Below are positions 15,705-63,547 of a stretch of 64,000 nt of DNA, piece after piece. Positions within the stretch are counted from its first letter, which is position 1; each line of letters starts with the position of its first letter. The notes under the pieces are model-generated. The model made no database searches. It saw only the letters and a program-made list of their open reading frames with translations, and was not told where the DNA came from. The stretch covers positions 124,001-188,000 of the IMG/VR virus record IMGVR_UViG_3300026521_000003. One strand, written 5' to 3'. Made by a program: the position numbers and the translations under genes.

Positions 15705-15713
15705 TCAAAAAAA

Positions 15714-15721
15714 TGTAAAAT
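15714..15721 (+). promoter_or_regulatory. TGTAAAAT promoter-like motif (pre-replicative class)
   Basis: TGTA(A/T)AAT precedes ten non-structural transcription units (see findings). Confidence 0.6.
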
Positions 15722-15752
15722 AACTAAAAATATAATATAAGGATAAAAAATA

Positions 15753-18471: not shown

Positions 18472-18543
18472 AGGACCCCCTTATAAATTTATATTATTTA
18501 TATAAAAAATGTAAAATATACTAAAATCTTATAAAGGTGAAAT

Positions 18544-33000: not shown

Positions 33001-33183
33001 ACGGGTCAATATCTAAGTAATCTTCATATCGCATTACAAATGCATGGTAAAGATTTTATGTCTAAAAGTGGATTATTACCATATGTATTAAATAAAAATC
33101 TTGATGCTGATATGGTTAAGAAAGTATCGGAAGCAGGAAATGAAATTAGAACAATGTTAAGTAATTTTGGTATTAAAGGTTAA
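30016..33183 (+). CDS. tandem MoxR-like AAA+ ATPase (two AAA modules) with N-terminal HTH
   Basis: HTH KKEIADELDITIPTLERYIK. Module 1: GDPGTGKT / ILFLDEYYR / VYASN / SPRRWE. Module 2: GEPGIGKT / LLLFDELTR / VGALN / SPREI. Confidence 0.85.
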   Translation: MNKLKSIILTEASLNDKITSRAKITYDALIAIILATDDGKITDKNKKEIADELDITIPTLERYIKQAVTNKFISSSGEVLDKYKKESTGKVKASGKVSQALNARVKKFKAPKVSSNNLFSEQVFKMLSLMDGQAAQAGVKNSLMLTGDPGTGKTSFIRNFAKLLGLPLIPIEAPHITEEHIINIPFMIIRGNKVKKENAIIETAGKANLDDKQEFDIVQAESNLVTKLKAMKNLKLKDQQHIASIASDKNLRPIYLNYKSLIDSIRDSYHCILFLDEYYRNDNMKIRNILRNILNGRIGNDKIPKGTFIVYASNMEDDGVEDIPMNNDFAEMEFKTPDREQWFKYILNKYEENSGNDYPGVKLQPEVFNKFYDVLEQSDLSYEDATAEVRNSPRRWEQILLYVNASLPVSNIKEARTLMSNLQVNFRNYTEETVSNLYPKFEKMVVGLIKETSGIEFDGRPTNQVDWKDTLQQQLEVKIKLDGQSDSEKEVRQYVPVVSGEPGIGKTAHMRTVADDLDLHFIHIDVSTLTRESTTGIPKASQATDIDGNPEFDQNGNPVMTTEFSKPELLDLIEKKMQEELAEDEMFPEDQRKKGKGKYRFLLLFDELTRADAQVFNAIRKLLLEKSFNEQYDLPKSIMTVGALNPVDNGAEELTKHMRDVLDIIPSRASWAKTESYLLSEERPVGLEEVMGFDLNTATVGALKGLLQQYQSKDEDWRGNPVSKEERLFNLRDGSNIIYISPREITDIVTMTNANIVNRLTKVGLKSFSNEVQSEEVDGMSDDEFMQLMMQQAENPDSVKEKIAQDKGIFNLRNRYSEEDYDVFIRAMINEFREAWASKLTFICKKMDIDAANVLSLTTGFISTNSVVYDQYEAIKTLVVDDVKNIEEMFDAYWDNPEELYDSPHFDNYLTVNFTAPQKFTQEITDYLSDKLVEIEQDTSTDMVTVESENGPVEIPKNIAKKMELFYKYILYTKSILKVLTDKSEYAGKVKEAQRTGQYLSNLHIALQMHGKDFMSKSGLLPYVLNKNLDADMVKKVSEAGNEIRTMLSNFGIKG

Positions 33184-35407: not shown

Positions 35408-35456
35408 ATCCACGATATACACTTATCAGACTTTTTGTAAAATAGTTAATATTAAT

Positions 35457-35478
35457 TTAAGTATTAATTTAATATAAT
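35457..35478 (+). promoter_or_regulatory. TTAAG-N11-TATAAT host-sigma70-type promoter
   Basis: Same spacing recurs at 54497, 55915 and 58910. Confidence 0.6.
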
Positions 35479-35505
35479 AACTAAGAAAAGAAACAAGGAG
35501 TTTTA

Positions 35506-35828: not shown

Positions 35829-38132
35829 ATGATTAAATTATTAAGTGAAGAAGTAGAAAATATTATTAATGTTGCATGGGAAGATGCCGCTAAACGTAAA
35901 CAGGAATATTTATTATTAGAAAATATTTTATTTAGTGCATTGGATAATAAAGAAGTTCAAGATATTATGCATGATTTGGATGTTGAATGGAAAGATTTAA
36001 AAGCTAAATTGGATTCTTTTTTAGAAACAGAAATTGAAAAAGTTGACAATGTACAACATCCTAAGCAAACGATAATGTTTAAGAAGATTCTTCAGCATTT
36101 GATATTTCATTCTCAAAATAGTGGTAAGATTGCTCAAGTCGAAGACCTACTTATTGCGATGTTTAATGAGCCAGAAACTACAGCCGTTTATCTTATGAGT
36201 GAATTCGGTATTGATGAATATGCTCTTAAAGAATTAGCAACAGAAATTCGTCATCCTGAAGATATGGATGAAGATGACGAAGATGAAGATGTAGTTCAAC
36301 CACGTAATAGTAGATCTAAGAAGAAAAAGAAATCTGCATTAGAACAATATGCTATGAATATTACGGATATGGCAAAAGAAGGTAAAATCGACCCTGTTAT
36401 TGGGAGAGATGAAGAGACAGATAGGGTTATTCAAATTCTTTGTAGAAAAAAGAAAAATAATCCACTACTTGTCGGTGAAGCTGGTGTTGGTAAAACAGCA
36501 TGTGTTGAAAAATTAGCATTAGATATTGTGAATGATGATGTCCCTTCTCAAATAAAAGATTGGCAAATTTTTTCTATAGACATTACCGCTATGATTGCAG
36601 GAGCTAAATTTAGAGGTGATTTTGAAAAGAGATTACAAGATATTTTAACTGAGTTAGAAGAAAAAGATAAATGTATTGCATTTTTTGATGAATTCCATAC
36701 AATGTTTGGTCTTGGAGCTAATAGTTCAAATCAATTAGATGCTACTAATATTCTTAAACCTGCTATGATGAATGGTAAAATTAAAATCATGGGTGCTACA
36801 ACATATGAAGAAGCTAAGAATACTGTTGATAAAAATAAACCTATGGCTAGAAGATTTCAAAAAGTAGATATTTTAGAACCTGATGAGGAAACAACATTTA
36901 AAATTTTAAAAGGTTTAAAAAATACATTTGAAGAATATCATAATGTTAGTTACTCTGATAAGATTTTAAAACAGATAGTTTCATTAAGTGGTAAACATTT
37001 AGTAGACAATCATTTTCCAGATAAAGCGATAGATATTGTTGATGAAGTCGGCTCTGTTATAAAATTAGCTACTCAAACAGAAGAAAGAGTTGCAATCAAA
37101 GAAAAAGATATTACTGATTTAATTTCAAGTAAAGCAAGAGTACCAGTAACTATTGAAGATGGTGATGATAAATTAGGATTAGAAAATCTTGAAACTAATA
37201 TCAAAGCTAAATTATATGGTCAGGATCATGCTGTATCAGAAATAGCCGAAAAAGTTATGTTAGCAAGAGCAGGATTAAATGAACCAGGGAAACCTATGGG
37301 AGCATTTATGCTTGCTGGTCCAAGTGGTGTAGGTAAAACAGAATTAGCAAGACAGTTGTCTGAACAATTAGGAAACCTTAAACTACTGCGTTATGATATG
37401 TCTGAATTTATGGAAGAAACTGGTGTAGCTAAACTTACAGGATCTGCTCAAGGGTATGTAGGATATGAAGAAGGAGGAAGATTGATTAATGATATTAAAA
37501 AGCATCCTCATTCTATTCTTTTATTGGATGAATTTGAAAAATCACATCCAAAAATTCAGAATACATTCCTTCAAATTTTAGAAGAAGCAGAATTATCTAG
37601 TTCTGATGGTACAAAAGCCGATTTTAGAAATGTATTTATTTTATTCACTACTAATGCGGGAAGTAAAGTTAGTAAAACTGTTGGTTTTGGTGGTAATGCA
37701 GGTAAATCAAAATCTATAGCAGCTATTGAAAAAGCATTTTCTCCTGAATTTAGAAATAGATTAGATGGTGTAATTCAATTCAATCCATTGGGTGATGAAC
37801 AAGTATTTAAAGTAGCTGAAAAAATACTTAATGAGATAAGAGATCAACTTAAAACTAAAAATGTACAACTTACAGTTACAAAATCAGCAAAACAAGTTAT
37901 GGCTGATAAAGGCTTTGATCCAACTATGGGTGCTCGTCCTATGAAGAGAGTTATTCAAGATCTTATTAAGAAACCAGTAGCAAAAGAAATAGTATTAGGT
38001 AAATTAAAAGATGGTGGTCGAGTTAAGGTTGATACTGATAAAGATGGTGAAATCATTTTAAAATTTACATCTCAAGAAGAATTAAATGTTAAAAAAGATA
38101 AAAAAGAGATTGTTTCTGATAAGGTGGAATAA
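35829..38132 (+). CDS. clpA: ClpA AAA+ unfoldase
   Basis: DPVIGRD, KKKNNPLLVGEAGVGKT, AGAKFRGDFEKRL, FPDKAID, GPSGVGKTELA, DMSEFME, GYVGYEEGG, VGF loop, FSPEFRNRLD, GARPM; no M domain. Confidence 0.95.
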   Translation: MIKLLSEEVENIINVAWEDAAKRKQEYLLLENILFSALDNKEVQDIMHDLDVEWKDLKAKLDSFLETEIEKVDNVQHPKQTIMFKKILQHLIFHSQNSGKIAQVEDLLIAMFNEPETTAVYLMSEFGIDEYALKELATEIRHPEDMDEDDEDEDVVQPRNSRSKKKKKSALEQYAMNITDMAKEGKIDPVIGRDEETDRVIQILCRKKKNNPLLVGEAGVGKTACVEKLALDIVNDDVPSQIKDWQIFSIDITAMIAGAKFRGDFEKRLQDILTELEEKDKCIAFFDEFHTMFGLGANSSNQLDATNILKPAMMNGKIKIMGATTYEEAKNTVDKNKPMARRFQKVDILEPDEETTFKILKGLKNTFEEYHNVSYSDKILKQIVSLSGKHLVDNHFPDKAIDIVDEVGSVIKLATQTEERVAIKEKDITDLISSKARVPVTIEDGDDKLGLENLETNIKAKLYGQDHAVSEIAEKVMLARAGLNEPGKPMGAFMLAGPSGVGKTELARQLSEQLGNLKLLRYDMSEFMEETGVAKLTGSAQGYVGYEEGGRLINDIKKHPHSILLLDEFEKSHPKIQNTFLQILEEAELSSSDGTKADFRNVFILFTTNAGSKVSKTVGFGGNAGKSKSIAAIEKAFSPEFRNRLDGVIQFNPLGDEQVFKVAEKILNEIRDQLKTKNVQLTVTKSAKQVMADKGFDPTMGARPMKRVIQDLIKKPVAKEIVLGKLKDGGRVKVDTDKDGEIILKFTSQEELNVKKDKKEIVSDKVE

Positions 38133-39536: not shown

Positions 39537-42500
39537 ATGACACATTTTATTCAATTGCCTAACAAAACGGTTTCTTTATTAGACCAAGAGTTGGCATTAA
39601 AAAATGGAAATATTGCGTTTGAATTTGGTGGTACTGAAAAAGTACTTGTTACTGAAGAAGCACTACAAACAGCAATAGCAGGGATGTCTGCACCGATTAC
39701 TGTTGCAACTAAAGCCGATTTAGATGCATTGACAAATAATGATGTAATGACACATCAGAGAATTTTTGTACAAGATGATGGTGATGGTAAATGGGCATAC
39801 TATATGATTACAGATGTTACAGGAACAGTCCCAGCATATATTAAGGTATCTGACGAAGATATTTTTGGGGCTTTATTTTCTGATGATGTAACAGCACAAA
39901 TATCTAAAATCGGAGATTTAGCTAATTTAAATACTGGTATTTCTGTTAATTTGACAGATCCTACAACAATTATTGAAGCTATTAACGAAGTTTATGCTCA
40001 ACATTTAGCTCTTAACACAAGAGTTGGTGATAATGCTGATTTAACTACTACTGAAAAGGGTACTATTGTAGGTGCTATCAATGAATTGGTTGTAAATATC
40101 TCTTCTAATGATGGTGATATTTTAACAATCCAAAACAATATTGGTGATTTAACTACTATCAACTTAACAGAAGCTGTTGATAAAGCTTCAATCGTTGCGG
40201 CAATCAACAAGGTTATTGCAGTTCAAAATACTAAATTAGATGCAGAAGATGTTGTTCCTATCATAGTTTCATATACAGGTCTTTTAACTGAATTAACAAC
40301 AACTAACCAAAATTCTTTAGTAGAAGCAATTAATGAAATTGTTGCTGATGTTCAAGCTAATGAAGATGCTACAATTGCTGTTACTGGTGATTTAGCTAAT
40401 TTAGTTACTACTGATAAAACTAATTTAGTTGCTGCAATTAATGAGGTTCAAGGAAATGTTGTTACTGAAACTAATAGAGCTACTGGAGCTGAAGCTACAT
40501 TACAATCTAATATTGATGCTGAGGTTGCTAGAGCAACAACTGCTGAAAATACATTACAAACTAATTTAGATACTGAAGCTGCTACAAGAGCTGCTAATGA
40601 TGGTGATTTAACTACTTTAACTACTGATGTTAAATCTAATTTAGTTAATGCTATTAATGAAGTTGATGCTAATACTGATGCAGAGGCTGCAAGAGCAATA
40701 GCTGCTGAAACACAATTAACAACTGATTTAAATAATGAAGTAACTGCAAGAACTGCTGCTGATACTGCGATTCAAGCTGAGTTAGATGCTACACAAGTTG
40801 CTGCTGGATTGGGTGAAGATGGAAGTTATACAGCTGATGCTACAACAAATTATATAGCGACTGCAACAACTTTAACTGGAGCTGATAAATTATTAGATGC
40901 ACAAACTAAAGTAAATGCTGATGCAATCGCTGCTGAAACTACAAGAGCGACAACTGCTGAAACTACATTACAATCAAATATTGATACTGTATCTGCAGAC
41001 TTAGCTACAGAAACAACCGATAGAATAACAGCTGATAATGCTTTAAGTGATAGAATCGATTCATTAGAATCTGATGTAGATGGCGCAACAGGTGATTTAG
41101 CCGATTTAACTACTGATGCAAAAGACACTTTAGTTGATGCAATCAATGAAGTTGATGCACATGCTGATAAAAATGCGGCTGATTTAGCTACTGAAACTAC
41201 AAGAGCCACTGCTGCTGAAACAACTCTTCAAACTAACTTAGATAATGAAACTGCTAGAGCACAAGCTGCTGAAGCAACTTTAACAACTGATTTAGCAAAT
41301 GAAGTAACTAGAGCAACAGCTGCTGAACAAGCTAATACTGATGCGATTACTACTGAAACTACAAGAGCCACTGCTGCTGAAACAACTCTTCAAACTAACT
41401 TAGATAATGAAACTGCTAGAGCACAAGCTGCTGAAGCTAATTTACAATCTAATATTGATGCTGAAGCTGCTACTAGAGCAACTAATGATGGTTCATTAAC
41501 ATTCGATGAAAGTTTAAATACTACTACTACTGTTGAAAATGAAGATGGTACAACTTCTGAAGTTGTAACAACTCCAAGTGATTTAACTGATGCTATTAAT
41601 AAAGAAAATGCTAGAGCTAAAACTGTTGAAGCTGCTATTCAAGCTGATGTTGATGCTAATGAAGCTGCTATAACAGCAACTACTGATACATTAAGAAGTG
41701 ATTTAGATGCTGAAATTGCTAGAGCTACTACTGCTGAGCAAACTTTAGATACTAAAATTGATACAGCTGTTTCTAACTTAGTTGATGGTGCTCCAGAATT
41801 ATTAGATACTTTAAATGAACTGGCTCAAGCAATCAACAATGACGAAAATTTCTCTGTAACTGTTGCTAATGATATAGCTAACGCTAAATCTGAGTTAAGA
41901 GGTGCTGCATCTGAAGCTATGGATACAATGAAAGAAATTGAAGATGCTTTCAATGCTGAAAAAGCTGCAAGAGATGCAAGAGATGCTGAACAAGAACAAG
42001 CACTTACTGATGAAGTAACTAGAGCAACAACAGCAGAAGCTACATTACAAGCTAATATCGATGATTTAGCAGCAGAAGTAGAAAGTGGTAATGATGGATT
42101 ACAAACTGAAGTAGATGCTATTGAAAGTAATGTTGGGTTAAACGCTGATGGTTCTTATACTGCAGATACAGCAACAAATTATATTGGTACTGCTTATTCA
42201 GTAAGAAATGAAACTAAATTATTAGATACACAAGTTAAAGCTAATGCTGATGCAATTACTGCTGAAACTACAAGAGCTACTGATGCTGAAGCAACTTTAA
42301 CAAATGATTTAGCAAATGAAGTTACAAGAGCAACTACTGCTGAAACTACATTACAATCAAACATTGATACTGTTAGCGCAAATTTAGCTACTGAAACTAC
42401 TGCTAGAACGGATGCAGATACAGTTCTTCAAACTAATATTGATTCTGAAGCTGCTACTAGATTAGCTGCTGATAATGCATTAGATGCTAGAATTACTACT

Positions 42501-43817
42501 GTTGAAGATCAAGTTAATGGAAATATTGGTGATTTAAATACATTAACTACTGATGATAAAACTAATTTAGTTGCTGCAATTAATGAAGTTGATGCTCATA
42601 CAGACACAAATGCTGCAGGTTTAGCTACTGAAATTACAGCTAGACAAGACGCTATAACTAATGAAGCTACTTTAAGAGCTAATGCTGATACTCAATTAAC
42701 TAATGATATAGCTGCTGAAACTACAAGAGCGACATCTGCTGAAGCGGCAAATACAGCGGCGATTGCGACTGAAACTACAAGAGCAACTACTGCTGAAGGT
42801 AATTTAGGTTTTAATGCTGTATTAACTGTTGATGATGGTGAAGGTGGTACTAGATTAGCTGGAAACTTAACTGAAGCAATTAATGCTGAAGTTGCTAGAG
42901 CAACTGCTGCTAATACAAATACTAATAACGATTTATCTGCTGAAATTACTAGAGCTACTGCTGCTGAAGCAACTCTACAAAGTAATATTGATAATGAAGC
43001 AACAAGAGCACAAGCTGCTGAAGCTACATTAACTAATGATTTAGCAAGCGAAGTAACTAGAGCTACTGCTGCTGAAGCAACTTTACAAACTAATTTAGAT
43101 AATGAAACTACAAGAGCAACTACTGCTGAAAGCACACTTCAATCTAATATTGATGCAGAAGCATTAACTAGAAGTACTAATGATGGTTCATTAATTTTCA
43201 ACTCGCCATTAGCAGATGCTACTAATTTAACAGATGCTATTAATGCTGAATTATTAAGAGCAACTACTGCTGAAGCTGCTAATACTACTGCTATCAATAA
43301 TGAAAATACAAGAGCAACTGCTGCTGAGACTGTATTAACTGATAATTTAAATACAGAAATTGCTAGAGCTACAGCAGCAGAACAAGCTAATGCTGATGCA
43401 ATCGCTGCTTTAGATGGTGCAACAGATGCAAAAATAGGAGATTTAACAACTCTTACTACTGATGCTCAAAATACTGTTGTTGCTGCTATTAATGAAGTTA
43501 ATGCTGAAACTGATGCTAATACAAATCAAGTATCAGTTATTAAAGCATTTATTAATGATATGCTAAGTAAATCTGGAAAAACAGTTGATGCGATTGAGTT
43601 AGTTGCTAATACTGAGTATTCAATCGATATTTCTGATTTAGCTTCTACAAATGTTGCTGTAACAGTTTATTCTGTTAATGGTACCATTTTGAGTCAAGAA
43701 TACGGTATGTTTATTGATATTGATACTGCTAATGCGATTGTAAAAATCACTTCTTCAATAGATGTTACTGTTAAAGCTGTTATTGCTTCTGATATTTCAG
43801 GATTAACAATAGCGTAA
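39537..43817 (+). CDS. long coiled-coil tail fibre protein
   Basis: Dozens of E.TRAT.AE.TLQ.N.D 18-aa repeats, GDL..LTT..K.NLV.AINE knots and the fibre motif LVDGAPELLDTLNELAQAINND; TATAAATA at 39469-76. Confidence 0.85.
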   Translation: MTHFIQLPNKTVSLLDQELALKNGNIAFEFGGTEKVLVTEEALQTAIAGMSAPITVATKADLDALTNNDVMTHQRIFVQDDGDGKWAYYMITDVTGTVPAYIKVSDEDIFGALFSDDVTAQISKIGDLANLNTGISVNLTDPTTIIEAINEVYAQHLALNTRVGDNADLTTTEKGTIVGAINELVVNISSNDGDILTIQNNIGDLTTINLTEAVDKASIVAAINKVIAVQNTKLDAEDVVPIIVSYTGLLTELTTTNQNSLVEAINEIVADVQANEDATIAVTGDLANLVTTDKTNLVAAINEVQGNVVTETNRATGAEATLQSNIDAEVARATTAENTLQTNLDTEAATRAANDGDLTTLTTDVKSNLVNAINEVDANTDAEAARAIAAETQLTTDLNNEVTARTAADTAIQAELDATQVAAGLGEDGSYTADATTNYIATATTLTGADKLLDAQTKVNADAIAAETTRATTAETTLQSNIDTVSADLATETTDRITADNALSDRIDSLESDVDGATGDLADLTTDAKDTLVDAINEVDAHADKNAADLATETTRATAAETTLQTNLDNETARAQAAEATLTTDLANEVTRATAAEQANTDAITTETTRATAAETTLQTNLDNETARAQAAEANLQSNIDAEAATRATNDGSLTFDESLNTTTTVENEDGTTSEVVTTPSDLTDAINKENARAKTVEAAIQADVDANEAAITATTDTLRSDLDAEIARATTAEQTLDTKIDTAVSNLVDGAPELLDTLNELAQAINNDENFSVTVANDIANAKSELRGAASEAMDTMKEIEDAFNAEKAARDARDAEQEQALTDEVTRATTAEATLQANIDDLAAEVESGNDGLQTEVDAIESNVGLNADGSYTADTATNYIGTAYSVRNETKLLDTQVKANADAITAETTRATDAEATLTNDLANEVTRATTAETTLQSNIDTVSANLATETTARTDADTVLQTNIDSEAATRLAADNALDARITTVEDQVNGNIGDLNTLTTDDKTNLVAAINEVDAHTDTNAAGLATEITARQDAITNEATLRANADTQLTNDIAAETTRATSAEAANTAAIATETTRATTAEGNLGFNAVLTVDDGEGGTRLAGNLTEAINAEVARATAANTNTNNDLSAEITRATAAEATLQSNIDNEATRAQAAEATLTNDLASEVTRATAAEATLQTNLDNETTRATTAESTLQSNIDAEALTRSTNDGSLIFNSPLADATNLTDAINAELLRATTAEAANTTAINNENTRATAAETVLTDNLNTEIARATAAEQANADAIAALDGATDAKIGDLTTLTTDAQNTVVAAINEVNAETDANTNQVSVIKAFINDMLSKSGKTVDAIELVANTEYSIDISDLASTNVAVTVYSVNGTILSQEYGMFIDIDTANAIVKITSSIDVTVKAVIASDISGLTIA
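41188..41437 (+). repeat. 88-bp exact direct repeat (41188-41275 / 41350-41437) inside the fibre gene
   Basis: Copies are offset by 162 bp, i.e. 3 x 54-bp repeat units. Confidence 0.85.
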
Positions 43818-43826
43818 GCTTACTTT

Positions 43827-43853
43827 TTCTAACCGAGTAAAACTCGGTTAGAA
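43827..43853 (+). terminator. intrinsic terminator
   Basis: Perfect 12-bp stem ttctaaccgagt-aaa-actcggttagaa followed by tttt. Confidence 0.8.
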
Positions 43854-43878
43854 TTTTAAATTTAAAGGAAATAAATTA

Positions 43879-44988
43879 ATGCAAGTTATAGAAGTAAAAC
43901 AAACAGATATTATAAATGATATACCAAATAATGTTATAGTTTTTAATAAAGAAACTCAATCATATTTTAAAAAAGACCAGTCGGTTATATTGACTGATAA
44001 TTTGACATTTAGAGATGCTATCTTGAATGAATATGCTAGCTGGGCAAGGTTTAGAGAAAAAGAGTTAGAGAGTGACTTTATTAAATACTATGATACCAAT
44101 GATAAAGAAAAGATTCTGAATGTTTTTAATGAAGACGATAAAATTATAGCTTTAGCGGAAGCTAGAAAACTAGAATTTGATACCACCCACATTTATTCTA
44201 ATATAAATGATGATATAAAAAATATATTTGAACAAAATAGACTAATAATTGATGATTTATACCTAACTCAATTTAATAAAGTAATATACGTAGATCAAAC
44301 CATAGGTTTAGATACTAATGGTGGTAGTATCGATTATCCTGTAAAAACTATACGTAGAGCGGAATCAATGATTATTGAAAAAACCGCTATAGTTTTAATG
44401 CATGGTATCTATGATATAACAAAAGGTAATACTAGATCGAATAAAAGATATTGTATCTCTGGCTTAGCAAGTAATATTGATAGCAATAATAATATTTTAT
44501 CAGTTGAATATATTAATATCGGTGCGATAGGTGATGTTATACTAATGGTTGATACAGATGGATTAGACTATGAATCAAGAGATTTATCGTTTGTTAATGG
44601 TATTATGAATGAAAATTCAAAAGCTATTGGTATTATATTTAAAATGCTTGATAAAAATAAAGAAAGCAACTATTCTGTAAGTATTGTGAGAAATTCAGAA
44701 GGATTTCAATTAATAGATTGTGTTTGTGATTTGGATGTTATGAATGGTAGTGTCGTGTATAATAAAACTGAGAATATCATTTCGGTAAAATTTATTAATA
44801 CTATTATAAATTATAAAAAAGCCTTAAATGGTGAGCAATATGATAGACCATATAGAGGTATATATGAACTTGAAAATTCTTTTATTAATAATGATCTTAA
44901 AATAAAAATTGATACGTATGATTCAAAACCTATGGATATAAATGGTAATGTATCAATGCTACAAAATTTAAATTTACGCAATTTTTAA
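43879..44988 (+). CDS. virion-associated protein with beta-helix-like (pectin-lyase fold) start motif
   Basis: VIYVDQTIGLDTNGGSIDYPVKTIRRA matches the YV....G.D.N.GS...P.KTI..A motif. Confidence 0.55.
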   Translation: MQVIEVKQTDIINDIPNNVIVFNKETQSYFKKDQSVILTDNLTFRDAILNEYASWARFREKELESDFIKYYDTNDKEKILNVFNEDDKIIALAEARKLEFDTTHIYSNINDDIKNIFEQNRLIIDDLYLTQFNKVIYVDQTIGLDTNGGSIDYPVKTIRRAESMIIEKTAIVLMHGIYDITKGNTRSNKRYCISGLASNIDSNNNILSVEYINIGAIGDVILMVDTDGLDYESRDLSFVNGIMNENSKAIGIIFKMLDKNKESNYSVSIVRNSEGFQLIDCVCDLDVMNGSVVYNKTENIISVKFINTIINYKKALNGEQYDRPYRGIYELENSFINNDLKIKIDTYDSKPMDINGNVSMLQNLNLRNF

Positions 44989-45093
44989 AAAAATACAATA
45001 TATCAGTTTAAATAATTTTTTCTCTTTTTTGAATAAATAAATAGAAAGTTAATTATGTGAACAAATAGTTTACAATAAAGGGAGAGTAAAATT

Positions 45094-48000
45094 ATGGCGA
45101 TTTTAAAAAGAAGTAAACAATCGATTGTTGGATTAGATGTTCAATTAGCAAATATTGAAACAAATATAACTAATAATCTAACCAATCTTAATGCTGAAAT
45201 TACAAGAGCACAAAATGCAGAAGGTGTAATAAACAATAATCTTAATAGTGTTACGGCTACAGTTAATATATTAAATGCTGATAGTACTACTGTGGGATCA
45301 GTTGATAAAAAAATAATCGACGCCACTTCAGAGTTAATGACCGCTACAAATACATATACTAAGGTGGAAGTTGATAATATTGTATCAACAAAACTTGATA
45401 GTTCATTGGTGTTAAGTACTGTTTCATCGGGTAATTTGATTGTAACCCAAACAGAATTAAATTTAAAAGCTAATTCGTCGGATGTTTATAGTAAATCTGA
45501 GATGGATACTAATTTAGATGGTAAAGCTGATGCATCATCAACTTATACGAAAACAGAAGTTGATAGTATAGCGGCTAATTTAGCTAATACATCTGATGTT
45601 TACACTAAAACAGAAACAGATAATCTAATTGCACCAAAAGCCAATTCATCCGATGTTTATACTAAAACAGAAGTTGATTCTAGTTTAGCTAATAAAGTAA
45701 ATACCACCGATACTATAACTGCAATTTCATCAACAAATAAAATAGCGACTCAAACAGAATTAGATTTAAAAGCTAATTCATCCGATGTTTATACTAAACC
45801 GGAAGTTGATTCTAGTTTAAGTGGTAAGATTAATACTACTGATACAGTTACGGGGATATCATCTACTAATAAGGTAGTAACTGAAGCTGAACTTTCAACT
45901 AAAGCTAATACTACTGATGTTTACACCCAAACACAGATTAATGATGCTTTAGCATTGAAACTGAATTCGACAGATGGTGGAAAAATTGGACCTTCACTTA
46001 AAGTTGTTGATGAAACTAATATTGCAGATACAAAAATATTATCGTATGATGCAGCTAGTGGTAATATAGTATATGTTGATAAGCCATCTTCTGGTGATTC
46101 TATTGATGATGGTACTATAACTAGTACTACTACTTGGAGTTCATCAAAAATTAAAACAGAATTAGATTTAAAAGCAGATGCGGATAATGTTTATACTAAA
46201 ACAGAAGTTGATACATCTATTTCTGCAGCAAGTCAAGGGATAAAATATGCTGTTGCTGATATAGATGCATTGAATGCTTTAACAGATATGGAACAAGATG
46301 ATCAAGCATTGGTTGAATCGGATAGATATGTCTATAAATATGATGCTACAGATGGTTGGGTTCAATTCTATGCAATGGATGCTACACATAATCACGATGA
46401 TTTATATTACACTAAATCAGAAGCCGATACATTTTTAGGAACAAAACTGAATTCGACAGATGGTGGAAAAATTGGACCCTCACTTAAAGTTGTTGATGAA
46501 ACTAATATTGCAGATACAAAAATATTATCGTATGATGCAGCTAGTGGTAATATAGTATATGTTGATAAGCCGGCAGATGGTCTTCCAGGAGAGGATGGGG
46601 CTGATGGTACATTGGCTGATGATTCTGTTGTATCTACAAGCACTACATGGACATCTAGTAAAATTGATAGTGAATTAAGTTTAAAAGCTGATGCAGCAGA
46701 AACATATACTAAGACAGAAGTTGATGATATTGCTTTAACAAAGGTTAATGTAGGAGATGTATTAAGTGAAATTTCAACATCAAACAAAGTTGTTACTCAA
46801 ACAGATATTGCAGGCAAAGCAGATGCAACAAATGTTTATACTACTTCAGAAATAGATTCATTAGCATTATCAAAAGTGAATACCAGCGATGTGTTATCAT
46901 CTATTACTGATAGTAATAAAGTTGTTACTCAAACAGATATTGCAGGTAAAGCGGATGCAACAAACGTATATACTAAGTCGGAAAGCGATAGTAATTTATC
47001 ATTAAAGGCTAATACATCAGATGTATATACAAAATCAGAAATAGATTCTAGTTTAGCTGGTAAATTAAATACTACGGATAGTGTTACTTCTGTTTCGGAT
47101 ACTAATAAATTAGTTACAGAATCAGAAATAACTAGTTTTGCTAATTCTGCGGATGTTTATACTAAATCAGAAGTTGATGCTATCGTTTTACCGAAATTTG
47201 ATGATGCTGTAGCTTTAACTAGTGTTTCAACAAGTAATAAGTTAGTAACTGAAACGGAATTATCAACAAAAGTTAATACTACTGATATTAAAACATCAAC
47301 ATCGTCTACTAATAAAATTGTAACAGAATCAGATGTAACCGCTGCAATAGATGCAAATAATGCTACACTATCACAAGCCCCAATTATTGCTGTAGATAGA
47401 CCTATATTATCTACACAATCTGCGAACGATCTTGATTATGTGTTTTCTTTCCCTTTAAGCAAAACACCACACGGTTTAATTGCAGTAAATGATGAAATTA
47501 CTATTTATGATTATGATGGTTCTGGACAATCGATAGTATTTGAAAATGTTTCTCTTTTTTCTGATAAACATGGTGAAATCGCAGTAACGTTAGCAAGTAC
47601 ATCAGATGAAGATGATTATGCAGGAAAAACAATTAAAGTATGTTATTTAACAACTGAAACAACAGTTACTCCAGGAACAGATGAAGCGCACCCAATTATA
47701 ATTAATACTAATGTTGAATTTGAATCACAAGGTTCGGGAACAACAAATTATTCGATTGATTTTTCACAAGGTAACTATTATATGGTACAATTTGACGTAA
47801 CAGAAGATGCTGATGGTAATGGTACTGATTGGAATCCAAAAGTTTCAGTAGTATTAGATACTTCACATTCTGCTAATGGTGGATTTCATTCTTCTAATTC
47901 AACTGATTATGAAGCAAATCTTTATTTAAATGATGACGATTACGCTGCTTTAGATAAAAAATCTATTGCATGGCCAGGAACTAGTGATGAAGCTCAGTAC

Positions 48001-48111
48001 ATTCAGTATAATTGGACAATGGCTATTGAAGCAGATGCAAATGATTCTACAGGAAATATTTATATTTTATCATTCACTCAAGGTGATTCTGTTGGTGGTG
48101 GAGCACTATAA
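45094..48111 (+). CDS. tail fibre protein with KA(N/D)..DVYTK.EVD repeats
   Basis: Many KAN.SDVYTK.E.D repeats, TTWSSSKI and HNHDDLYYTK motifs, distinct C-terminal domain. Confidence 0.8.
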   Translation: MAILKRSKQSIVGLDVQLANIETNITNNLTNLNAEITRAQNAEGVINNNLNSVTATVNILNADSTTVGSVDKKIIDATSELMTATNTYTKVEVDNIVSTKLDSSLVLSTVSSGNLIVTQTELNLKANSSDVYSKSEMDTNLDGKADASSTYTKTEVDSIAANLANTSDVYTKTETDNLIAPKANSSDVYTKTEVDSSLANKVNTTDTITAISSTNKIATQTELDLKANSSDVYTKPEVDSSLSGKINTTDTVTGISSTNKVVTEAELSTKANTTDVYTQTQINDALALKLNSTDGGKIGPSLKVVDETNIADTKILSYDAASGNIVYVDKPSSGDSIDDGTITSTTTWSSSKIKTELDLKADADNVYTKTEVDTSISAASQGIKYAVADIDALNALTDMEQDDQALVESDRYVYKYDATDGWVQFYAMDATHNHDDLYYTKSEADTFLGTKLNSTDGGKIGPSLKVVDETNIADTKILSYDAASGNIVYVDKPADGLPGEDGADGTLADDSVVSTSTTWTSSKIDSELSLKADAAETYTKTEVDDIALTKVNVGDVLSEISTSNKVVTQTDIAGKADATNVYTTSEIDSLALSKVNTSDVLSSITDSNKVVTQTDIAGKADATNVYTKSESDSNLSLKANTSDVYTKSEIDSSLAGKLNTTDSVTSVSDTNKLVTESEITSFANSADVYTKSEVDAIVLPKFDDAVALTSVSTSNKLVTETELSTKVNTTDIKTSTSSTNKIVTESDVTAAIDANNATLSQAPIIAVDRPILSTQSANDLDYVFSFPLSKTPHGLIAVNDEITIYDYDGSGQSIVFENVSLFSDKHGEIAVTLASTSDEDDYAGKTIKVCYLTTETTVTPGTDEAHPIIINTNVEFESQGSGTTNYSIDFSQGNYYMVQFDVTEDADGNGTDWNPKVSVVLDTSHSANGGFHSSNSTDYEANLYLNDDDYAALDKKSIAWPGTSDEAQYIQYNWTMAIEADANDSTGNIYILSFTQGDSVGGGAL
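45958..46571 (+). repeat. 128-bp direct repeat (45958-46085 / 46444-46571)
   Basis: Both copies encode KLNSTDGGKIGPSLKVVDETNIADTKILSYDAASGNIVYVDKP; one synonymous mismatch seen (cct/ccc). Confidence 0.9.
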
Positions 48112-48118
48112 TATAGAT

Positions 48119-48138
48119 GAGAGATTATAAAATCTCTC
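48119..48138 (+). terminator. terminator-like hairpin
   Basis: gagagatt-ataa-aatctctc after the fibre gene. Confidence 0.6.
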
Positions 48139-48172
48139 TCTATTTTAGTATAAATAAAATAAAGGAGTTAAC

Positions 48173-48520
48173 ATGGCACGACAAAAAACTATAAAAGTTA
48201 AATCATCGTTTGAAAAACAAAATAAACATTCAGAATTTAAATTGGATTTTAATAAAACAAATAAATATAAAATTGTTTTTGAAGATGGTTACTATGCTAC
48301 AATAACTGACCATACAGAGCATATTTTGAATGATGATGATGTCGAAGCTGTTTTATATTCTCCAGAAGGTAAGAAAAAACTAATAAATTGGGTGTCGGCA
48401 AAAGCTGATGAAGCTCAATTTATTGCATATAATTGGTTTATGCAAATTCAGTTATTAAAAAATAATATTTATTCATTAACATTTTATCGTGGTAAAAGTG
48501 TTGGTGGTGGTGTTTTATAA
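48173..48520 (+). CDS. stand-alone paralogue of the 45094 fibre C-terminal domain
   Basis: DEAQFIAYNWFM...NIYSLTFYRGKSVGGGVL versus DEAQYIQYNWTM...NIYILSFTQGDSVGGGAL; own TATAAATA at 48149-56. Confidence 0.75.
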   Translation: MARQKTIKVKSSFEKQNKHSEFKLDFNKTNKYKIVFEDGYYATITDHTEHILNDDDVEAVLYSPEGKKKLINWVSAKADEAQFIAYNWFMQIQLLKNNIYSLTFYRGKSVGGGVL

Positions 48521-48529
48521 GGAGTTATA

Positions 48530-48988
48530 ATGGCATTAATAAAAGAAGAATGGATTATACGGAAAACTTCGACTGTTAGTATTGATGCGGCTAATAGTTA
48601 TATTCGAGATCAATTAGACAACAAACAGGATGCAGAGGAAAATATAAGTTCGTCTGGTGATTATATTGATAATTTTTTCGCAGATCTATTTGATTCGAGG
48701 GATGGGTCGTTATATCGTATTTATTCGGTTGGTGCAACAAATAATTCTGCCGTAATTGATGGAGACGCAGATAACGGAGATTCATATTTTAATGTTGTTT
48801 TGACAGCAGACGTAATTACAGAGATTGAAAACTCTGGAACTTTCTTAAAAACAAGCGACGCTTCAGTAACTTATGCTACTAAAGATGAAATCCCTGATTT
48901 AACAAATTATAGAGTGGAATCAGAGATTGTACAAATTGTAGATGATAAAATTGGTGCAATTCAAATAGATGAAGTTATAATAGGATAG
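48530..48988 (+). CDS. virion structural protein (fibre cluster)
   Basis: Late operon context; TYATKDEIPDL fibre-like motif. Confidence 0.55.
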   Translation: MALIKEEWIIRKTSTVSIDAANSYIRDQLDNKQDAEENISSSGDYIDNFFADLFDSRDGSLYRIYSVGATNNSAVIDGDADNGDSYFNVVLTADVITEIENSGTFLKTSDASVTYATKDEIPDLTNYRVESEIVQIVDDKIGAIQIDEVIIG

Positions 48989-48992
48989 AATA

Positions 48993-49970
48993 ATGGCTAT
49001 AAAAACAATTAATGGTATATTAAAATCAGATAGTGCTAAAACAGCTGATGAATTCAATTCAGATATTTTAAACGCGTGTAATAATGCAGAGAGTTTAGAT
49101 ACGGCTAATAACTATGTGGGTTTAGTATTTAATCTTAAAGATAAAAGAATAGATTTTGTTCCTAGTGATTCTGTTAGTACTGATTTTAGTGTTAATTCTA
49201 CTACCATTGTGGATGGTAGTTCTGGTACAAATATAGAAGATGCTTATGTAAGAACGGAAGCTACACCAATTTCTGTTGGTGGTGTAACAACAGGAACAAC
49301 GTTTGATGGAACAGTTGCAGATGCATTGGATAAAGTTTTATATCCATATGTTCAACCAACATTTTCTTCATTTTATTTATCATCACAACTTACATCATTA
49401 GAAGTAGGAGATAAAATTTCGGGTGGTAGTAGAACATTTACATGGGCTACAACTACTTCTGAAAATATATCAAGTAATTCAATTAAAATTACGTTGGATT
49501 CAACAATTTTATTAGAAAATGTTGCAGATAGTGGCTCTGCAACAATAGATATTGGTTCTGATATTATTAATACAAGTGCAACATCAAATTACTTCTATAT
49601 TTATGCAACTGATACTCAAGGAGATACTATAAGTCGAATATTTGCAGTTTATTGGAAGTGGCGTTTATATTATGGTTCATCTGCATTAGAAGTAATTGAT
49701 GAAAATAATGTAAAAACACTACAAAATAGCTTTTTATATACCACAGAGAATTACACTTATGCAACTCCAGCTGAAAATTTTAAATGGATTTGTTATCCAG
49801 TATCTTTTGGATTAGCTAGTAAATTTACAGATATTGATACTGGATTTAGTGTAGCTATGGAAAGTCCACAAACGGTATCAATAACGAATGATTTTGGTGT
49901 TACAACGGATTATTATTGTTATCGTACTACTAATAGTCTGACTGGCGCAGTTAATATCAAAATAGGTTAA
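48993..49970 (+). CDS. virion structural protein (fibre cluster)
   Basis: SVGGVTTGTTFDGTVADALDKVLYPYVQPTF; Ser/Thr-rich, predicted beta-rich. Confidence 0.6.
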   Translation: MAIKTINGILKSDSAKTADEFNSDILNACNNAESLDTANNYVGLVFNLKDKRIDFVPSDSVSTDFSVNSTTIVDGSSGTNIEDAYVRTEATPISVGGVTTGTTFDGTVADALDKVLYPYVQPTFSSFYLSSQLTSLEVGDKISGGSRTFTWATTTSENISSNSIKITLDSTILLENVADSGSATIDIGSDIINTSATSNYFYIYATDTQGDTISRIFAVYWKWRLYYGSSALEVIDENNVKTLQNSFLYTTENYTYATPAENFKWICYPVSFGLASKFTDIDTGFSVAMESPQTVSITNDFGVTTDYYCYRTTNSLTGAVNIKIG

Positions 49971-49984
49971 AGGGGAGATATAAT

Positions 49985-50779
49985 ATGGCATCATATAGCG
50001 GTACAATAGTTTTATCTGGTATGATAAGTCCAACGGATACGTTAGACCAATATCCAACACATGAAGATATTTTAGGGAAAGGTGGTTATAGTACAGTATT
50101 AGATCTTACTGCTAGAGATAACATTACATCATTGCGACGTAAAAGTGGAATGATGGTATATGTTGAATCAGAAGATATGATTTATATATTAAAAGGGGGT
50201 ATAGATAATACTAATTGGACTGAATTTAGTGCATCATCTACATCTTCAACCGATGAATTGTTGATTACTACTATACCAGTCACAAATATTATTAATACTA
50301 TATTTTCAGGTGTGACAATACCGGATGGTGAAATATTATATGTGCGTGGTAATGAGGGAGAGATTGATACTACTATTTATTCTGGTACTTTATCGACAGT
50401 ATTAATCAATAATAATTACAATGATTTTATTATTGTTTTTGATGGAACTAGTTCATCGGTTTATGTAAACAGTAAGGTCGATGAATCACATGTACAGATA
50501 GCAATTAATGAATATCCAAAAAATTATGATGTAATTGATTTAAGTGTAAATTCTATTTCAGCTAATATTACATCACTTTTATCTACTAGTTATACTGATG
50601 CAGTGCAGGTATTTTCTTATGAAGGTATAATCTCAACATTAGAACGAGAGGATAATAGTTTTACTGCTTTAAATAAGAATAAAGAATTTGTAGTTATGTA
50701 TGATGGTCAGACTTTTTCAGCTTATAAAAAGCAGAAAGTTACTATTGCGGATCTACAAAATAAAAAAGTAATAATATAG
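49985..50779 (+). CDS. virion structural protein with fibre-associated N-terminal domain
   Basis: YPTH...GKGGY..V.DLTARDNI...RRKSGMMVYV...Y.L...NW. Confidence 0.6.
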   Translation: MASYSGTIVLSGMISPTDTLDQYPTHEDILGKGGYSTVLDLTARDNITSLRRKSGMMVYVESEDMIYILKGGIDNTNWTEFSASSTSSTDELLITTIPVTNIINTIFSGVTIPDGEILYVRGNEGEIDTTIYSGTLSTVLINNNYNDFIIVFDGTSSSVYVNSKVDESHVQIAINEYPKNYDVIDLSVNSISANITSLLSTSYTDAVQVFSYEGIISTLEREDNSFTALNKNKEFVVMYDGQTFSAYKKQKVTIADLQNKKVII

Positions 50780-50792
50780 AGAGGAAATATTA

Positions 50793-51458
50793 ATGGGTTT
50801 GGTGAAAAAAAATAAATTACATAATCCTCAAATTATATCTGATACACCACCCGTATCAATTACTTCTGATGATATCGGTAGATTATGGGTTGATAAGACA
50901 ACTAATACTATGTCGATTGCAATAGGTAGTAAAGTTGATGGATCTCCAGAATTACGAAATATTTTAGATTCAAACGATTTAACTAATATAGATGATAGTT
51001 TTTATAAAGGTATATCAGAAGAATTTGTTGATATAGTTTTACAAGTTTCTGGTGATAAACATTTCGATAACGGTTATGATTTTTTTAGTGATCCGGTTTT
51101 CTTAGAAAATTCAAATCAGGATTTAGATGATTATTATTCATTTTTTTATAAAGAAGTTGTAGACTCAACTTCAAATGGATATATACGTTCAATTTCAACC
51201 ATAGATGGAGTAAAGCATGTTCGAGCTGCAAATGGAAATGATTCATATTTATATGATGATAATACTATAAGTCATGTTAAATATTCTAAAATTATATTAA
51301 CATTAAAAGTTAAAGATGTAATAGGTATTACTTTTGATAATAAAGATATTTTAGAATCTGGATTTGAATTACAGTCAGATAAACAGACAATATTAATTTA
51401 TGCAGATCCAGAAGGTTTTTTTATAAATAAAAGGGTTAAAGTGAAATATATAATATAA
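50793..51458 (+). CDS. virion structural protein
   Basis: DTPP...DIGRLWVDKTT fibre-base-like motif; late operon. Confidence 0.55.
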   Translation: MGLVKKNKLHNPQIISDTPPVSITSDDIGRLWVDKTTNTMSIAIGSKVDGSPELRNILDSNDLTNIDDSFYKGISEEFVDIVLQVSGDKHFDNGYDFFSDPVFLENSNQDLDDYYSFFYKEVVDSTSNGYIRSISTIDGVKHVRAANGNDSYLYDDNTISHVKYSKIILTLKVKDVIGITFDNKDILESGFELQSDKQTILIYADPEGFFINKRVKVKYII

Positions 51459-51469
51459 AAGGTTGTATT

Positions 51470-51937
51470 GTGAAAATTGAAAAAGATACCATAATGGGTC
51501 AAGTTCTTCATCAAGTTAATGAAGATAAAAAAAATGCAAATATTATTGAAAAAATACATAACCTTATTAATTCGATTGAAGAAGAAGAATATGAGTTTAA
51601 TGATCAATTATGGACTTCATCAGATCTAATAGTTACAGATAAAAAAAATATAAGTTCTAATGATGAATTAATCATAATAACTGAATATGCTTATGAATTT
51701 AGTTGGTTGGTATATAAATTAAATGCAATATATTGTCCAAATAGAGTAACATCCAATAGATTATTTACTACTATCGGTTTTTTATTTGATATTTATATGG
51801 ATAAATATGAGGACATTATGATTGTTCTTAAAATGGTTATATTGGTATCGCTAGTTTGGTTGCACCCAGACCATATAGGACAAGATAAATTTTTAGTACA
51901 TCCGATTGATTTACCAAATTTTGGAAAGGAATTTTAA
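51470..51937 (+). CDS. hypothetical protein
   Basis: 155-aa ORF with hydrophobic C-terminal part. Confidence 0.5.
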   Translation: MKIEKDTIMGQVLHQVNEDKKNANIIEKIHNLINSIEEEEYEFNDQLWTSSDLIVTDKKNISSNDELIIITEYAYEFSWLVYKLNAIYCPNRVTSNRLFTTIGFLFDIYMDKYEDIMIVLKMVILVSLVWLHPDHIGQDKFLVHPIDLPNFGKEF

Positions 51938-52695: not shown

Positions 52696-52789
52696 AACAT
52701 CTCCAATTTATATAGTATATTTATAGATTTAAAAATAATTTTTCTAAAAAATGTAAAATAGTATATAATAAATGATATAAGGAAAATGA

Positions 52790-63103: not shown

Positions 63104-63487
63104 TTAATATCCTAATGCTTTTCTTACTGAATTCATAGAAGGTATTTTTAATTTTCTACCAAAGTAGAATCCTGTAAACGGATCTGTTATTCCATTTCGT
63201 TCGGCAATAATCCACCAAAATTTTGAATTACCATAGAATTTATATGATATTGCATCAGGTCTATTAGTGTATTTTGCATGGTCAATAGTCCATACATCAT
63301 CATCTAATTCTGCAATACTTAAATCGACTCTATGTTCCCATGTTTTACTTTTTGTTCCTGGTAACATATATGAAAATCTATTAACATCTCTTTTTGATGT
63401 ATCTTGAACTTTGAACCATTCTTGTTCTTGTTGAGGTACACTAGATCTGCTATCGTCGTATGGTCTTATAGGCATATCAAACTCCAT
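63104..63487 (-). CDS. gp53: baseplate wedge protein (T4 gp53-like, LysM fold)
   Basis: RPDAISYKFYGNSKFWWIIAERNGITDPF...KLKIP; adjacent to gp25. Confidence 0.85.
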   Translation of the reverse strand: MEFDMPIRPYDDSRSSVPQQEQEWFKVQDTSKRDVNRFSYMLPGTKSKTWEHRVDLSIAELDDDVWTIDHAKYTNRPDAISYKFYGNSKFWWIIAERNGITDPFTGFYFGRKLKIPSMNSVRKALGY

Positions 63488-63547
63488 TTAGTTATTTACT
63501 TATTTATTCAGTAAAATGTAAAATATTTGTATAAAGGGGAAAATCAT

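What the first reader, a model, noticed from the sequence alone, without database searches (positions are those of the whole stretch)
47680..48520. Free-standing, charge-reversed copy of a fibre C-terminal domain with its own late promoter
Seen: ORF 48173 aligns over its full length with the last ~140 aa of the 45094 fibre (IIINTNVEFESQ / TIKVKSSFEKQ; YSIDFSQGNYYMVQF / FKLDFNKTNKYKIVF; DEAQYIQYNW / DEAQFIAYNW; GDSVGGGAL / GKSVGGGVL). The fibre copy is Asp-rich and the free copy is Lys-rich. A terminator and a TATAAATA separate the two. Inference: the free copy could be an electrostatically complementary partner or cap for the tip, an alternative receptor-binding module, or a released receptor-blocking decoy.
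Basis: partly seen in the sequence, partly recalled or inferred. Interest (0 to 1): 0.6.

Follow-up and report, generated by a model that had tools for sequence, protein, structure and literature searches.

The report
Free-standing copy of a tail-fibre tip
A giant T4-like phage from hydrothermal-vent samples carries, right after its long tail-fibre gene, a small conserved gene that is an ancient duplicate of the fibre's own tip domain; it is most likely a fibre-tip assembly helper or cap, and the opposite electric charge seen here is not a conserved feature.

Summary
ORF 48173-48520 (115 aa) is homologous over its full length to the last ~140 aa of the 1005-aa fibre (45094-48111). BLASTP gives E 1e-14 for the C-terminal half. 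A profile built from small proteins alone hits fibre residues 870-1005 at E 1.9e-14, and a tip-only profile hits the small ORF at E 2.1e-27. These are the only two copies in the 290-kb genome.

The gene is real. Thirteen distinct lineages all keep the fibre tip plus a 104-128-aa free copy, adjacent and in the same order. dN/dS is 0.11-0.54. The duplication predates the whole clade (99/99 branch support).

A hairpin and a (T/A)ATAAATAAAA motif separate the two genes. That motif is enriched upstream of gene starts across the genome.

The charge reversal is not conserved. Orthologues of the small protein range from pI 4.75 to 9.3, while the tip is always acidic.

The tip has variable, insertion-rich loops. 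The small protein has short loops of near-constant length, which argues against a decoy or a second receptor binder.

The fold is an orphan all-beta domain with no Pfam, PHROG or PDB relative. My best reading (0.4) is an accessory in the T4 gp38 position that acts on its sister domain as assembly helper or cap.

The parts
45094..48111 (+). Long tail-fibre gene (1005 aa, pI 4.15). The shaft is built from ~44-aa repeats and is followed by two C-terminal globular domains.
   Evidence: ORF. PHROG tail-fibre families phrog_5004 (E 1.2e-41), phrog_23820 and phrog_10305. 132-nt repeat families.
47329..47673 (+). Penultimate fibre domain (about residues 746-860). It is highly conserved among orthologues and is modelled poorly as a monomer.
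   Evidence: Alignment A2. AF2 pLDDT below 60 for this part.
47674..48108 (+). Fibre C-terminal tip domain (about residues 861-1005), the sister copy of the small ORF. It is acidic (net -20) and has lineage-specific loop insertions.
   Evidence: AF2 pLDDT 80-94 over most of it.
48119..48138 (+). Terminator-like hairpin after the fibre stop codon, followed by a T-rich tail.
   Evidence: Folds at -14.5 kcal/mol, z -3.9. Hairpins of different sequence sit at the same place in L003, L006, L015 and L017.
48148..48159 (+). T4-late-promoter-like motif GTATAAATAAAA, ending 14 nt before the ATG.
   Evidence: In the whole genome, 39 of 127 TATAAATA copies lie within 60 nt upstream of a same-strand start, against ~3% of positions and 3-14% for scrambled octamers. 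The motif is conserved in the spacers of L003, L008 (AATAAATA), L010, L011 and L013.
48162..48167 (+). Shine-Dalgarno sequence AAGGAG, 5 nt before the ATG.
   Evidence: Read directly from the sequence.
48173..48520 (+). Small ORF of 115 aa, a free-standing paralogue of the fibre tip domain. Predicted as a nine-strand all-beta domain with an invariant C-terminal VGGGxL.
48530..51937 (+). Tightly packed downstream genes of 152, 325, 264, 221 and 155 aa (gaps of 9, 4, 14, 13 and 11 nt). Together with the small ORF they form one conserved gene string. The 264-aa product has tail or virion-protein PHROG hits.
   Evidence: Synteny in L003, L006, L008, L010, L011, L015 and L018.

Best explanation
The small ORF is a real, conserved late gene. 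It arose by an ancient duplication of the tail fibre's C-terminal tip domain and has since been kept as a separate protein beside that fibre.

It sits where T4 has gene 38, immediately after the distal long-fibre gene, in a gene row whose lengths (1426, 369, 1005, 115 aa) parallel T4 genes 34, 35, (36), 37, 38.

I take it to be a fibre-tip accessory protein. It would recognise its sister domain through the conserved core that both copies share. It would then help the fibre's C-terminus fold and trimerise, stay stacked on it as a non-covalent terminal cap, or do both.

Shown: homology, conservation, purifying selection, strict co-occurrence with the tip, a separate promoter-like motif, and a terminator-like hairpin in about half of the lineages. 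Inferred: physical binding to the tip and the assembly or cap role. Charge complementarity is not part of the mechanism.
For: - Full-length homology. There are only two copies in the genome.
- Conservation: twelve proteins (the window's own and 11 orthologues) of 114-116 aa at 57-74% identity, plus more distant ones of 104-128 aa.
- Co-occurrence: every locus that spans the region (13 distinct lineages) has the tip followed by the small ORF, including the distant L015, L017 and L018.
- Age of the duplication: tip and small copies are split by one branch with 99/99 support and length 1.43, so the duplication is older than the clade and both copies were kept.
- Selection: dN/dS is 0.11-0.54 (median ~0.24) for the small ORF against a median of ~0.34 for the tip.
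- Shared residues: 21 invariant columns are common to both paralogues, including FExQ, DG, W73, DE, YNW and the terminal VGGGxL. The C-terminal tail is the low-confidence part of both AF2 models, as expected for a segment ordered only in an assembly.
- Loops: constant short loops in the small protein against insertion-rich loops in the tip fit a housekeeping partner rather than a host-tracking binder.
- Position: the T4 row g34-35-36-37-38 has lengths 1289-372-221-1026-183 aa.
- Precedents for small downstream fibre chaperones that embrace or cap the tip: Pam3 gp25:gp24 at 3:3 (PMC9608196); Alteromonas A5/V22 chaperone 'caps' and a knob duplication inside the A5 fibre (PMC10579305).
Against: - There is no direct evidence of binding. 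The complex prediction could not be run.
- There is no sequence or profile similarity to T4 gp38 (hhalign probability 0.1%) or to any Pfam, PHROG or NCBIfam chaperone family.
- The fold is all-beta, unlike the helical cores of known fibre chaperones and intramolecular chaperone domains.
- The small ORF heads a string of five further genes. It is separated from the fibre by a terminator-like hairpin in five of the seven spacers folded, so it could belong functionally to the downstream genes.
- In the three most distant lineages the small protein evolves much faster than the tip (terminal branches 2.2-2.8 against 0.5-1.2).
- Expression is not shown. The metatranscriptome contigs cover the fibre and 48492-48717 but almost nothing of 48173-48491.
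Confidence: 0.4

Rival explanations
1. It is an independent virion component. The free domain would be a subunit of a second tail or baseplate appendage built with the products of the downstream genes (152, 325, 264, 221 aa). It would reuse the tip fold as a second ligand-binding or structural module and would not touch the long fibre.
For: - The small ORF is the first gene of a tightly packed, syntenic string (gaps 4-14 nt), set off from the fibre by a hairpin plus promoter motif.
- The 264-aa product hits tail or virion-protein PHROGs.
- The 325-aa product has homologues in the tail modules of unrelated phages.
- Weak structural resemblance (Z 4.0-4.7) to ~106-118-aa baseplate proteins of Pam3, Pa193, Bas63, PhiTE and XM1.
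- Polar residues shared by both paralogues could form a common ligand site.
Against: - Unrelated phages that carry the 325-aa homologue lack the domain. The small gene therefore follows the fibre tip and not the downstream genes.
- The Z scores are within noise.
- The 152-aa neighbour shows no similarity to the fibre's penultimate domain.
- A hairpin plus promoter between adjacent late genes is common here. It is also seen after the 1426-aa gene, so it does not mark a functional boundary.
Confidence: 0.25
2. It is a soluble decoy or alternative receptor binder. The free tip domain would be released at lysis, or displayed, and would bind the same host receptor as the fibre. That would mask receptors on debris or broaden host recognition.
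For: It is homologous to a fibre's distal domain and shares conserved polar residues with it. It is made from its own promoter-like site, so its amount can differ from that of the fibre.
Against: - The tip's variable loops and insertions (W/L003 about +23 aa, L011 +8, L017 +10) have no counterpart in the small protein, whose length is nearly fixed. A decoy for the same receptor should co-vary with the tip.
- The small protein is more conserved than the tip in the closer lineages (mean identity 0.71 against 0.65; lower dN/dS).
- It has no signal peptide, lipobox or hydrophobic segment (read from the sequence), so it cannot act at the envelope during infection as T5 Llp does.
Confidence: 0.08
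3. It is a decaying remnant of a tip-cassette exchange or a chance ORF with no function.
For: Fibre tips are recombination hot spots. The ORF has no known family.
Against: - It is intact in 13 lineages at 104-128 aa with dN/dS 0.11-0.54 while synonymous sites are near saturation (dS 0.6-1.5).
- It has a conserved ribosome-binding site and promoter motif.
- The duplication predates the clade.
- There are no long identical DNA tracts that would indicate a recent copy. The best are 31 nt at 81% and 57 nt at 70%.
Confidence: 0.02

Closest known systems
T4 gene 38 product (assembly catalyst of the distal long fibre gp37) and the unrelated T2/S16-type gp38 adhesin
   Same: A small gene lies immediately downstream of the ~1000-aa distal fibre gene, in a T4-like fibre gene row of parallel lengths. 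Its expected role concerns the fibre's C-terminus.
   Different: There is no sequence or profile similarity. Here the accessory is a paralogue of the fibre's own tip domain, which is not the case for either kind of gp38. The protein is smaller (115 against 183 aa).
Alteromonas phage A5/V22 tail fibre plus downstream chaperone ('transient caps'), with knob duplication in the A5 fibre (PMC10579305)
   Same: This is a marine phage fibre followed by a small cognate gene proposed to cap the distal knob, and duplication of the knob domain occurs in that system.
   Different: Those chaperones have a helical core with beta-hairpin tentacles, like intramolecular chaperone domains. They are not homologous to the knob. 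There the duplicated knob stays inside the fibre, while here the second copy is a separate gene.
Myocyanophage Pam3 fibre gp24 with chaperone gp25 (3:3 complex, cryo-EM; PMC9608196)
   Same: A small downstream protein with a beta-sandwich domain binds the fibre's distal domains and drives trimer assembly.
   Different: gp25 also has a C-terminal helical trimerisation domain and is not a copy of the fibre tip. No similarity was detected here.
C-terminal intramolecular chaperone domains (Peptidase_S74 type; T5 pb1, K1F endosialidase)
   Same: This is a C-terminal fibre domain with a possible folding role.
   Different: There is no Pfam match. The fold is all-beta, and no autoproteolytic serine motif was identified. 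The tip's variable loops look like a mature exposed domain and not a discarded chaperone.

Membership tests
T4 gp38-type fibre assembly catalyst | Sequence homology to T4 gp38 | tested here: not met
   hhalign of profile A1 against T4 gp38 gives probability 0.1%, E 0.47.
T4 gp38-type fibre assembly catalyst | Gene immediately downstream of the distal long-fibre gene | tested here: met
   The window order is 1426-369-1005-115 aa. T4 g34-35-36-37-38 are 1289-372-221-1026-183 aa. The 369-aa protein shows no similarity to gp35, so the parallel is positional only.
T4 gp38-type fibre assembly catalyst | Required for trimerisation of the fibre and absent from the virion | not testable with these tools
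Known tail-fibre assembly or chaperone families (Pfam, PHROGs, NCBIfam) | Significant profile match | tested here: not met
   Pfam gives only a sub-threshold MAP hit (17.4 bits against a cut-off of 24.3). PHROGs gives none. NCBIfam gives none.
Intramolecular chaperone domain (Peptidase_S74-like) | Helical core with beta-hairpin tentacle; Pfam match; autoproteolytic serine | tested here: not met
   No Pfam match for the fibre or the small ORF. The AF2 models are all-beta. The family features are described in PMC10579305.
Diversity-generating retroelement (variable region / template repeat pair) | Near-identical DNA repeat downstream of the target gene's 3' end, differing mainly at adenines, with a reverse transcriptase nearby | tested here: not met
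   The best DNA repeats between tip and small ORF are 31 nt at 81% and 57 nt at 70%. The two copies are 36-43% identical as proteins. No neighbouring gene has a reverse-transcriptase match.
T4-type late promoter | TATAAATA element shortly upstream of late genes | tested here: met
   The motif lies at 48149-48156. Genome-wide, 31% of copies lie within 60 nt upstream of a same-strand start, against 3-14% for scrambled octamers. The same element stands before structural-gene starts 571, 20521, 21797, 23018 and 39037. The presence of a gp55-like late sigma factor was not tested.
Intrinsic terminator | G+C-containing hairpin followed by a T run | tested here: met
   Hairpin at 48119-48138 with tail TCTATTTTAG, folding at -14.5 kcal/mol, z -3.9. 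This is a pattern match only, and termination was not shown.
T5 Llp-type receptor-blocking lipoprotein | Signal peptide with lipobox | tested here: not met
   The N-terminus is MARQKTIKVKSSFEKQ, with no hydrophobic segment or cysteine lipobox (sequence).

The most novel reading that the evidence does not exclude
The small protein is the product of a fission, or of a duplication that never fused, of a tandem tip domain. It would assemble non-covalently on its sister domain as a terminal knob. This would be a self-paralogous fibre cap or chaperone with an orphan all-beta fold, unrelated to gp38, Tfa or intramolecular-chaperone types. It could even be the true distal end of the fibre.
Probability: 0.3. 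Interest if true: 0.6.

Novelty: new variant of a known kind. Interest (0 to 1): 0.4.

Why it matters
Small genes downstream of fibre genes are usually called chaperones without evidence, and the known ones are unrelated to the fibre they serve. Here the downstream gene is a copy of the fibre's own tip, kept for the whole history of a phage clade.

If it binds its sister domain, it would show a new route by which fibre accessories arise, namely domain duplication and separation. It would also give a simple two-protein system for studying how fibre tips fold or are capped.

The domain family is tiny: 13 cluster representatives among 1.84 billion. It is confined to uncultured jumbo phages seen mainly in hydrothermal-vent, epibiont and biofilm samples, so the practical reach is limited.

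Tried and rejected
There is no verdict on binding.
- **Fold searches with the small-protein model** (pLDDT 87). Foldseek against PDB and BFVD found nothing at E <= 0.001. VIA-align wide gave a best Z of 5.8 to flavivirus E domain I, and small phage baseplate proteins scored only Z 4.0-4.7, which is within noise. ESM Atlas by shape gave TM up to 0.60 to unnamed proteins. Atlas by features gave nothing.
- **Fold search with the 260-aa fibre model** matched only the poorly modelled penultimate domain, to FAD-binding-type barrels at Z about 7. That is uninformative.
- **PDB profile search** found nothing.
- **Cultured phages** (INPHARED): no DNA or protein match.
- **IMG/VR and GTDB genomes**: no further loci.
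- **P0025** (3359 aa, 13 partial matches) is an FN3-repeat protein. I treated it as spurious strand-level similarity.
- **The 152-aa neighbour as a 'shaft without a tip'**: no similarity to the fibre.
- **T4 gp35 and gp38 homology**: none.
- **Charge complementarity**: rejected as a conserved feature.
- **Expression**: the one RNA library holding this phage has contigs on the fibre and on 48492-48717 but almost none on 48173-48491. Nine of 30 bins are empty overall, so this is inconclusive.
- **Literature searches** found no described case of a downstream paralogue of a fibre tip.
Full report
**Context.** The window is bases 124001-188000 of a 289,880-bp IMG/VR virus record, estimated 87% complete, with about 27% G+C. 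Tail-sheath-stabiliser, baseplate-wedge and long-tail-fibre PHROG hits, and a gene shared at 47% identity with T4-like cyanophages, mark it as a distant T4-like jumbo myovirus. Public runs holding the stretch are labelled hydrothermal-vent, epibiont and biofilm metagenomes. No cultured phage matches the region.

**Check of the observation.**
- ORF 48173-48520 encodes 115 aa. The fibre ORF 45094-48111 encodes 1005 aa.
- BLASTP aligns small 52-115 with fibre 945-1005 at 49% identity, E 1e-14.
- The N-terminal halves align colinearly with a score reached by 1 of 2000 shuffles.
- Orthologues make the full-length relationship plain. In fibres without the window's loop insertions, the motif TDGYYT..NINHD..HT lines up with DGYYV..TITDKTEHI of the small proteins.
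- A 19-sequence alignment has 21 invariant columns shared by both kinds of protein.
- The non-circular test is decisive. A profile of small proteins only finds the fibre (residues ~870-1005, E 1.9e-14). A profile of tips only finds the small ORF (E 2.1e-27). There are no other hits among the 775 ORFs of the genome, in agreement.
- The composition contrast is real here: small pI 9.0, net +2.8; tip pI 4.05, net -20.
- The spacer holds a hairpin at 48119-48138 with a T-rich tail (-14.5 kcal/mol, z -3.9), TATAAATA at 48149-48156 and AAGGAG before the ATG.

**Is the gene real?**
- A word search returned the window's own protein and 11 orthologues, all of 114-116 aa at 57-74% identity.
- An exhaustive profile search of 1.84 billion cluster representatives found only 13 clusters. 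These are small proteins of 104-128 aa, the C-termini of 718-995-aa fibres, a 199-aa protein (P0016) that looks like a fibre fragment, and one spurious FN3-repeat protein.
- Contexts fetched for nine proteins show one conserved order: fibre, small ORF, then genes of ~150, ~325, ~265 and ~220 aa. L017 lacks the ~325-aa gene.
- A profile scan of all fetched loci finds tip and small copy adjacent in all 13 distinct lineages.
- Pairwise dN/dS of the small ORF is 0.11-0.54 at dS 0.6-1.5. The tip gives 0.14-0.55 with a higher median.
- In a maximum-likelihood tree the 13 tips and 13 small proteins are separated by a single branch (99/99 support, length 1.43). The duplication is therefore older than the clade and both copies were retained throughout.
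- DNA similarity between the copies is limited to 31 nt at 81% and 57 nt at 70%, so there has been no recent gene conversion.

**Charge.**
- Across lineages the small protein has pI 4.75-9.3 and net charge -5.4 to +4.7. The tip has net charge -7 to -21.
- The small protein is always less acidic than the tip, but it is net positive in only eight of thirteen lineages.
- The correlation of the two charges is weak and is not corrected for phylogeny.
- In this phage 22% of proteins, and 31% of the small ones, have pI above 8.
- 'Charge-reversed' therefore describes this genome and its nearest relative. It is not a conserved property.

**Transcription signals.**
- TATAAATA is not enriched overall in this A+T-rich window (34 copies against 32 expected), but it is enriched by position.
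- Genome-wide, 39 of 127 copies lie within 60 nt upstream of a same-strand start. About 3% of positions do so, and scrambled octamers give 3-14%.
- The extended form (T/A)ATAAATAAA stands 23-37 nt before many starts, including 571, 20521, 21797, 23018, 39037 and 48173.
- It is kept in the orthologous spacers of L003, L008, L010, L011 and L013.
- L006 and L015 instead carry TTGTAAAATAA. In the window that motif precedes replication-type genes.
- Hairpins of unrelated sequence follow the fibre stop codon in five lineages and are absent in the L008/L013 group.
- A hairpin followed by a promoter motif also separates other late genes here, so this arrangement is ordinary for the phage.

**Structure.**
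- With the 19-sequence alignment, AlphaFold2 gives a confident nine-strand all-beta domain for the small protein (pLDDT 87, pTM 0.79). The loop at 50-53 and the last three residues are weak.
- The fibre's last 260 aa give a confident tip domain (most 10-residue blocks 78-94, with dips to 60-65) behind a poorly modelled penultimate domain.
- No library gives a convincing fold relative. The domain is an orphan by sequence and by available fold searches.

**What it most likely does.**
- The small gene sits where T4 has gene 38. The T4 row g34-35-36-37-38 is 1289-372-221-1026-183 aa, and the window row is 1426-369-1005-115 aa. The parallel is positional only, because neither gp35 nor gp38 is similar in sequence.
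- Known small genes in that position are fibre chaperones or tip-bound adhesins. Solved or modelled examples embrace or cap the distal knob (PMC9608196; PMC10579305).
- Three features fit an accessory that recognises conserved parts of its sister domain: strict co-inheritance with the tip, invariant residues shared by both copies, and an invariant C-terminal tail that is ordered in neither monomer model.
- The tip has lineage-specific insertions (127-150 aa). The small protein has fixed short loops, is slightly more conserved in the closer lineages (0.71 against 0.65 mean identity) and does not follow the tip's insertions. That is the pattern of a housekeeping partner, not of a second receptor binder or decoy.
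- The protein has no signal peptide or hydrophobic segment.
- I put the 'tip partner: assembly helper and/or cap' reading at 0.4. An independent tail component working with the downstream genes gets 0.25, a decoy or alternative binder 0.08, and a relic 0.02. The remainder is for roles not considered.

**Limits.**
- Expression is not shown. One metatranscriptomic library holds identical contigs on the fibre and on 48492-48717 but almost none on the body of the small ORF. Its coverage is patchy overall, and DNA carry-over cannot be excluded.
- Unrelated phages that carry a homologue of the 325-aa neighbour lack the domain. This weakly ties the small gene to the fibre tip rather than to the downstream genes, but those phages are very distant.
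- No natural variant with one copy but not the other was found.

**Verdict.** This is a new variant of the fibre-plus-downstream-accessory theme, in which the accessory is a paralogue of the fibre's own tip. Interest is moderate.

Noticed in passing
window 15700-15752, 18490-18543, 35440-35505, 52730-52789, 63470-63526: A second upstream motif, (AA)TGTAAAATA, stands 30-45 nt before replication-type genes (helicase 15753, gyrase-B-like 52790 and others). It looks like a separate, earlier promoter class. Relatives L006 and L015 carry it in front of their small ORF instead of TATAAATA.
   Followed up: partly
window 39537-48520: The gene lengths 1426-369-1005-115 aa mirror T4 genes 34-35-(36)-37-38 (1289-372-221-1026-183 aa). 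However, the 369-aa protein and the small ORF show no sequence similarity to gp35 or gp38.
   Followed up: yes
window 45347-47333; 45948-46112 and 46434-46598: The fibre shaft is built from about 132-nt (44-aa) repeats of the YTK.E.D type. It also contains a 165-nt internal duplication at 89% identity.
   Followed up: partly
window 48993-49970: The 325-aa protein two genes downstream is the best-conserved gene of the module (76% mean column identity). It has 36-45% identical homologues in the tail modules of unrelated 30-42-kb phages (L030-L032). It matches no Pfam, PHROG or NCBIfam family.
   Followed up: partly
window 48127-48159: In three DNA metagenome runs, other contigs share just these 32 nt (the 3' half of the hairpin plus TATAAATAAAA) and diverge on both sides, with a depth spike in one run. 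This could be a shared regulatory cassette among co-occurring relatives or an assembly effect.
   Followed up: no
window 48171-50350: Contigs in runs X3 and X4 join 48171 to 50350 with 10 other letters in between, skipping the small ORF and the next two and a half genes. The anchoring side is only 20 nt, so this is probably another organism or a repeat. I did not rely on it.
   Followed up: no
window 35829-38132 and 30016-33183: The phage encodes a 767-aa ClpB/Clp-like ATP-dependent protease-family protein (phrog_4871, E 1.6e-232) and a 1055-aa double AAA ATPase. The distant relative L018 has a ClpB-like gene in the same neighbourhood.
   Followed up: no
L006 12384-13913: One relative has a SegE-like GIY-YIG homing-endonuclease gene inserted between the fibre module and the gyrase-B-like gene. 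It is absent from the window.
   Followed up: no
window 45094-50779 in run X5: A biofilm metatranscriptome library holds 100%-identical contigs of this phage's fibre module. This suggests the phage was present, and possibly active, in that sample. Transcription as such is not shown.
   Followed up: partly
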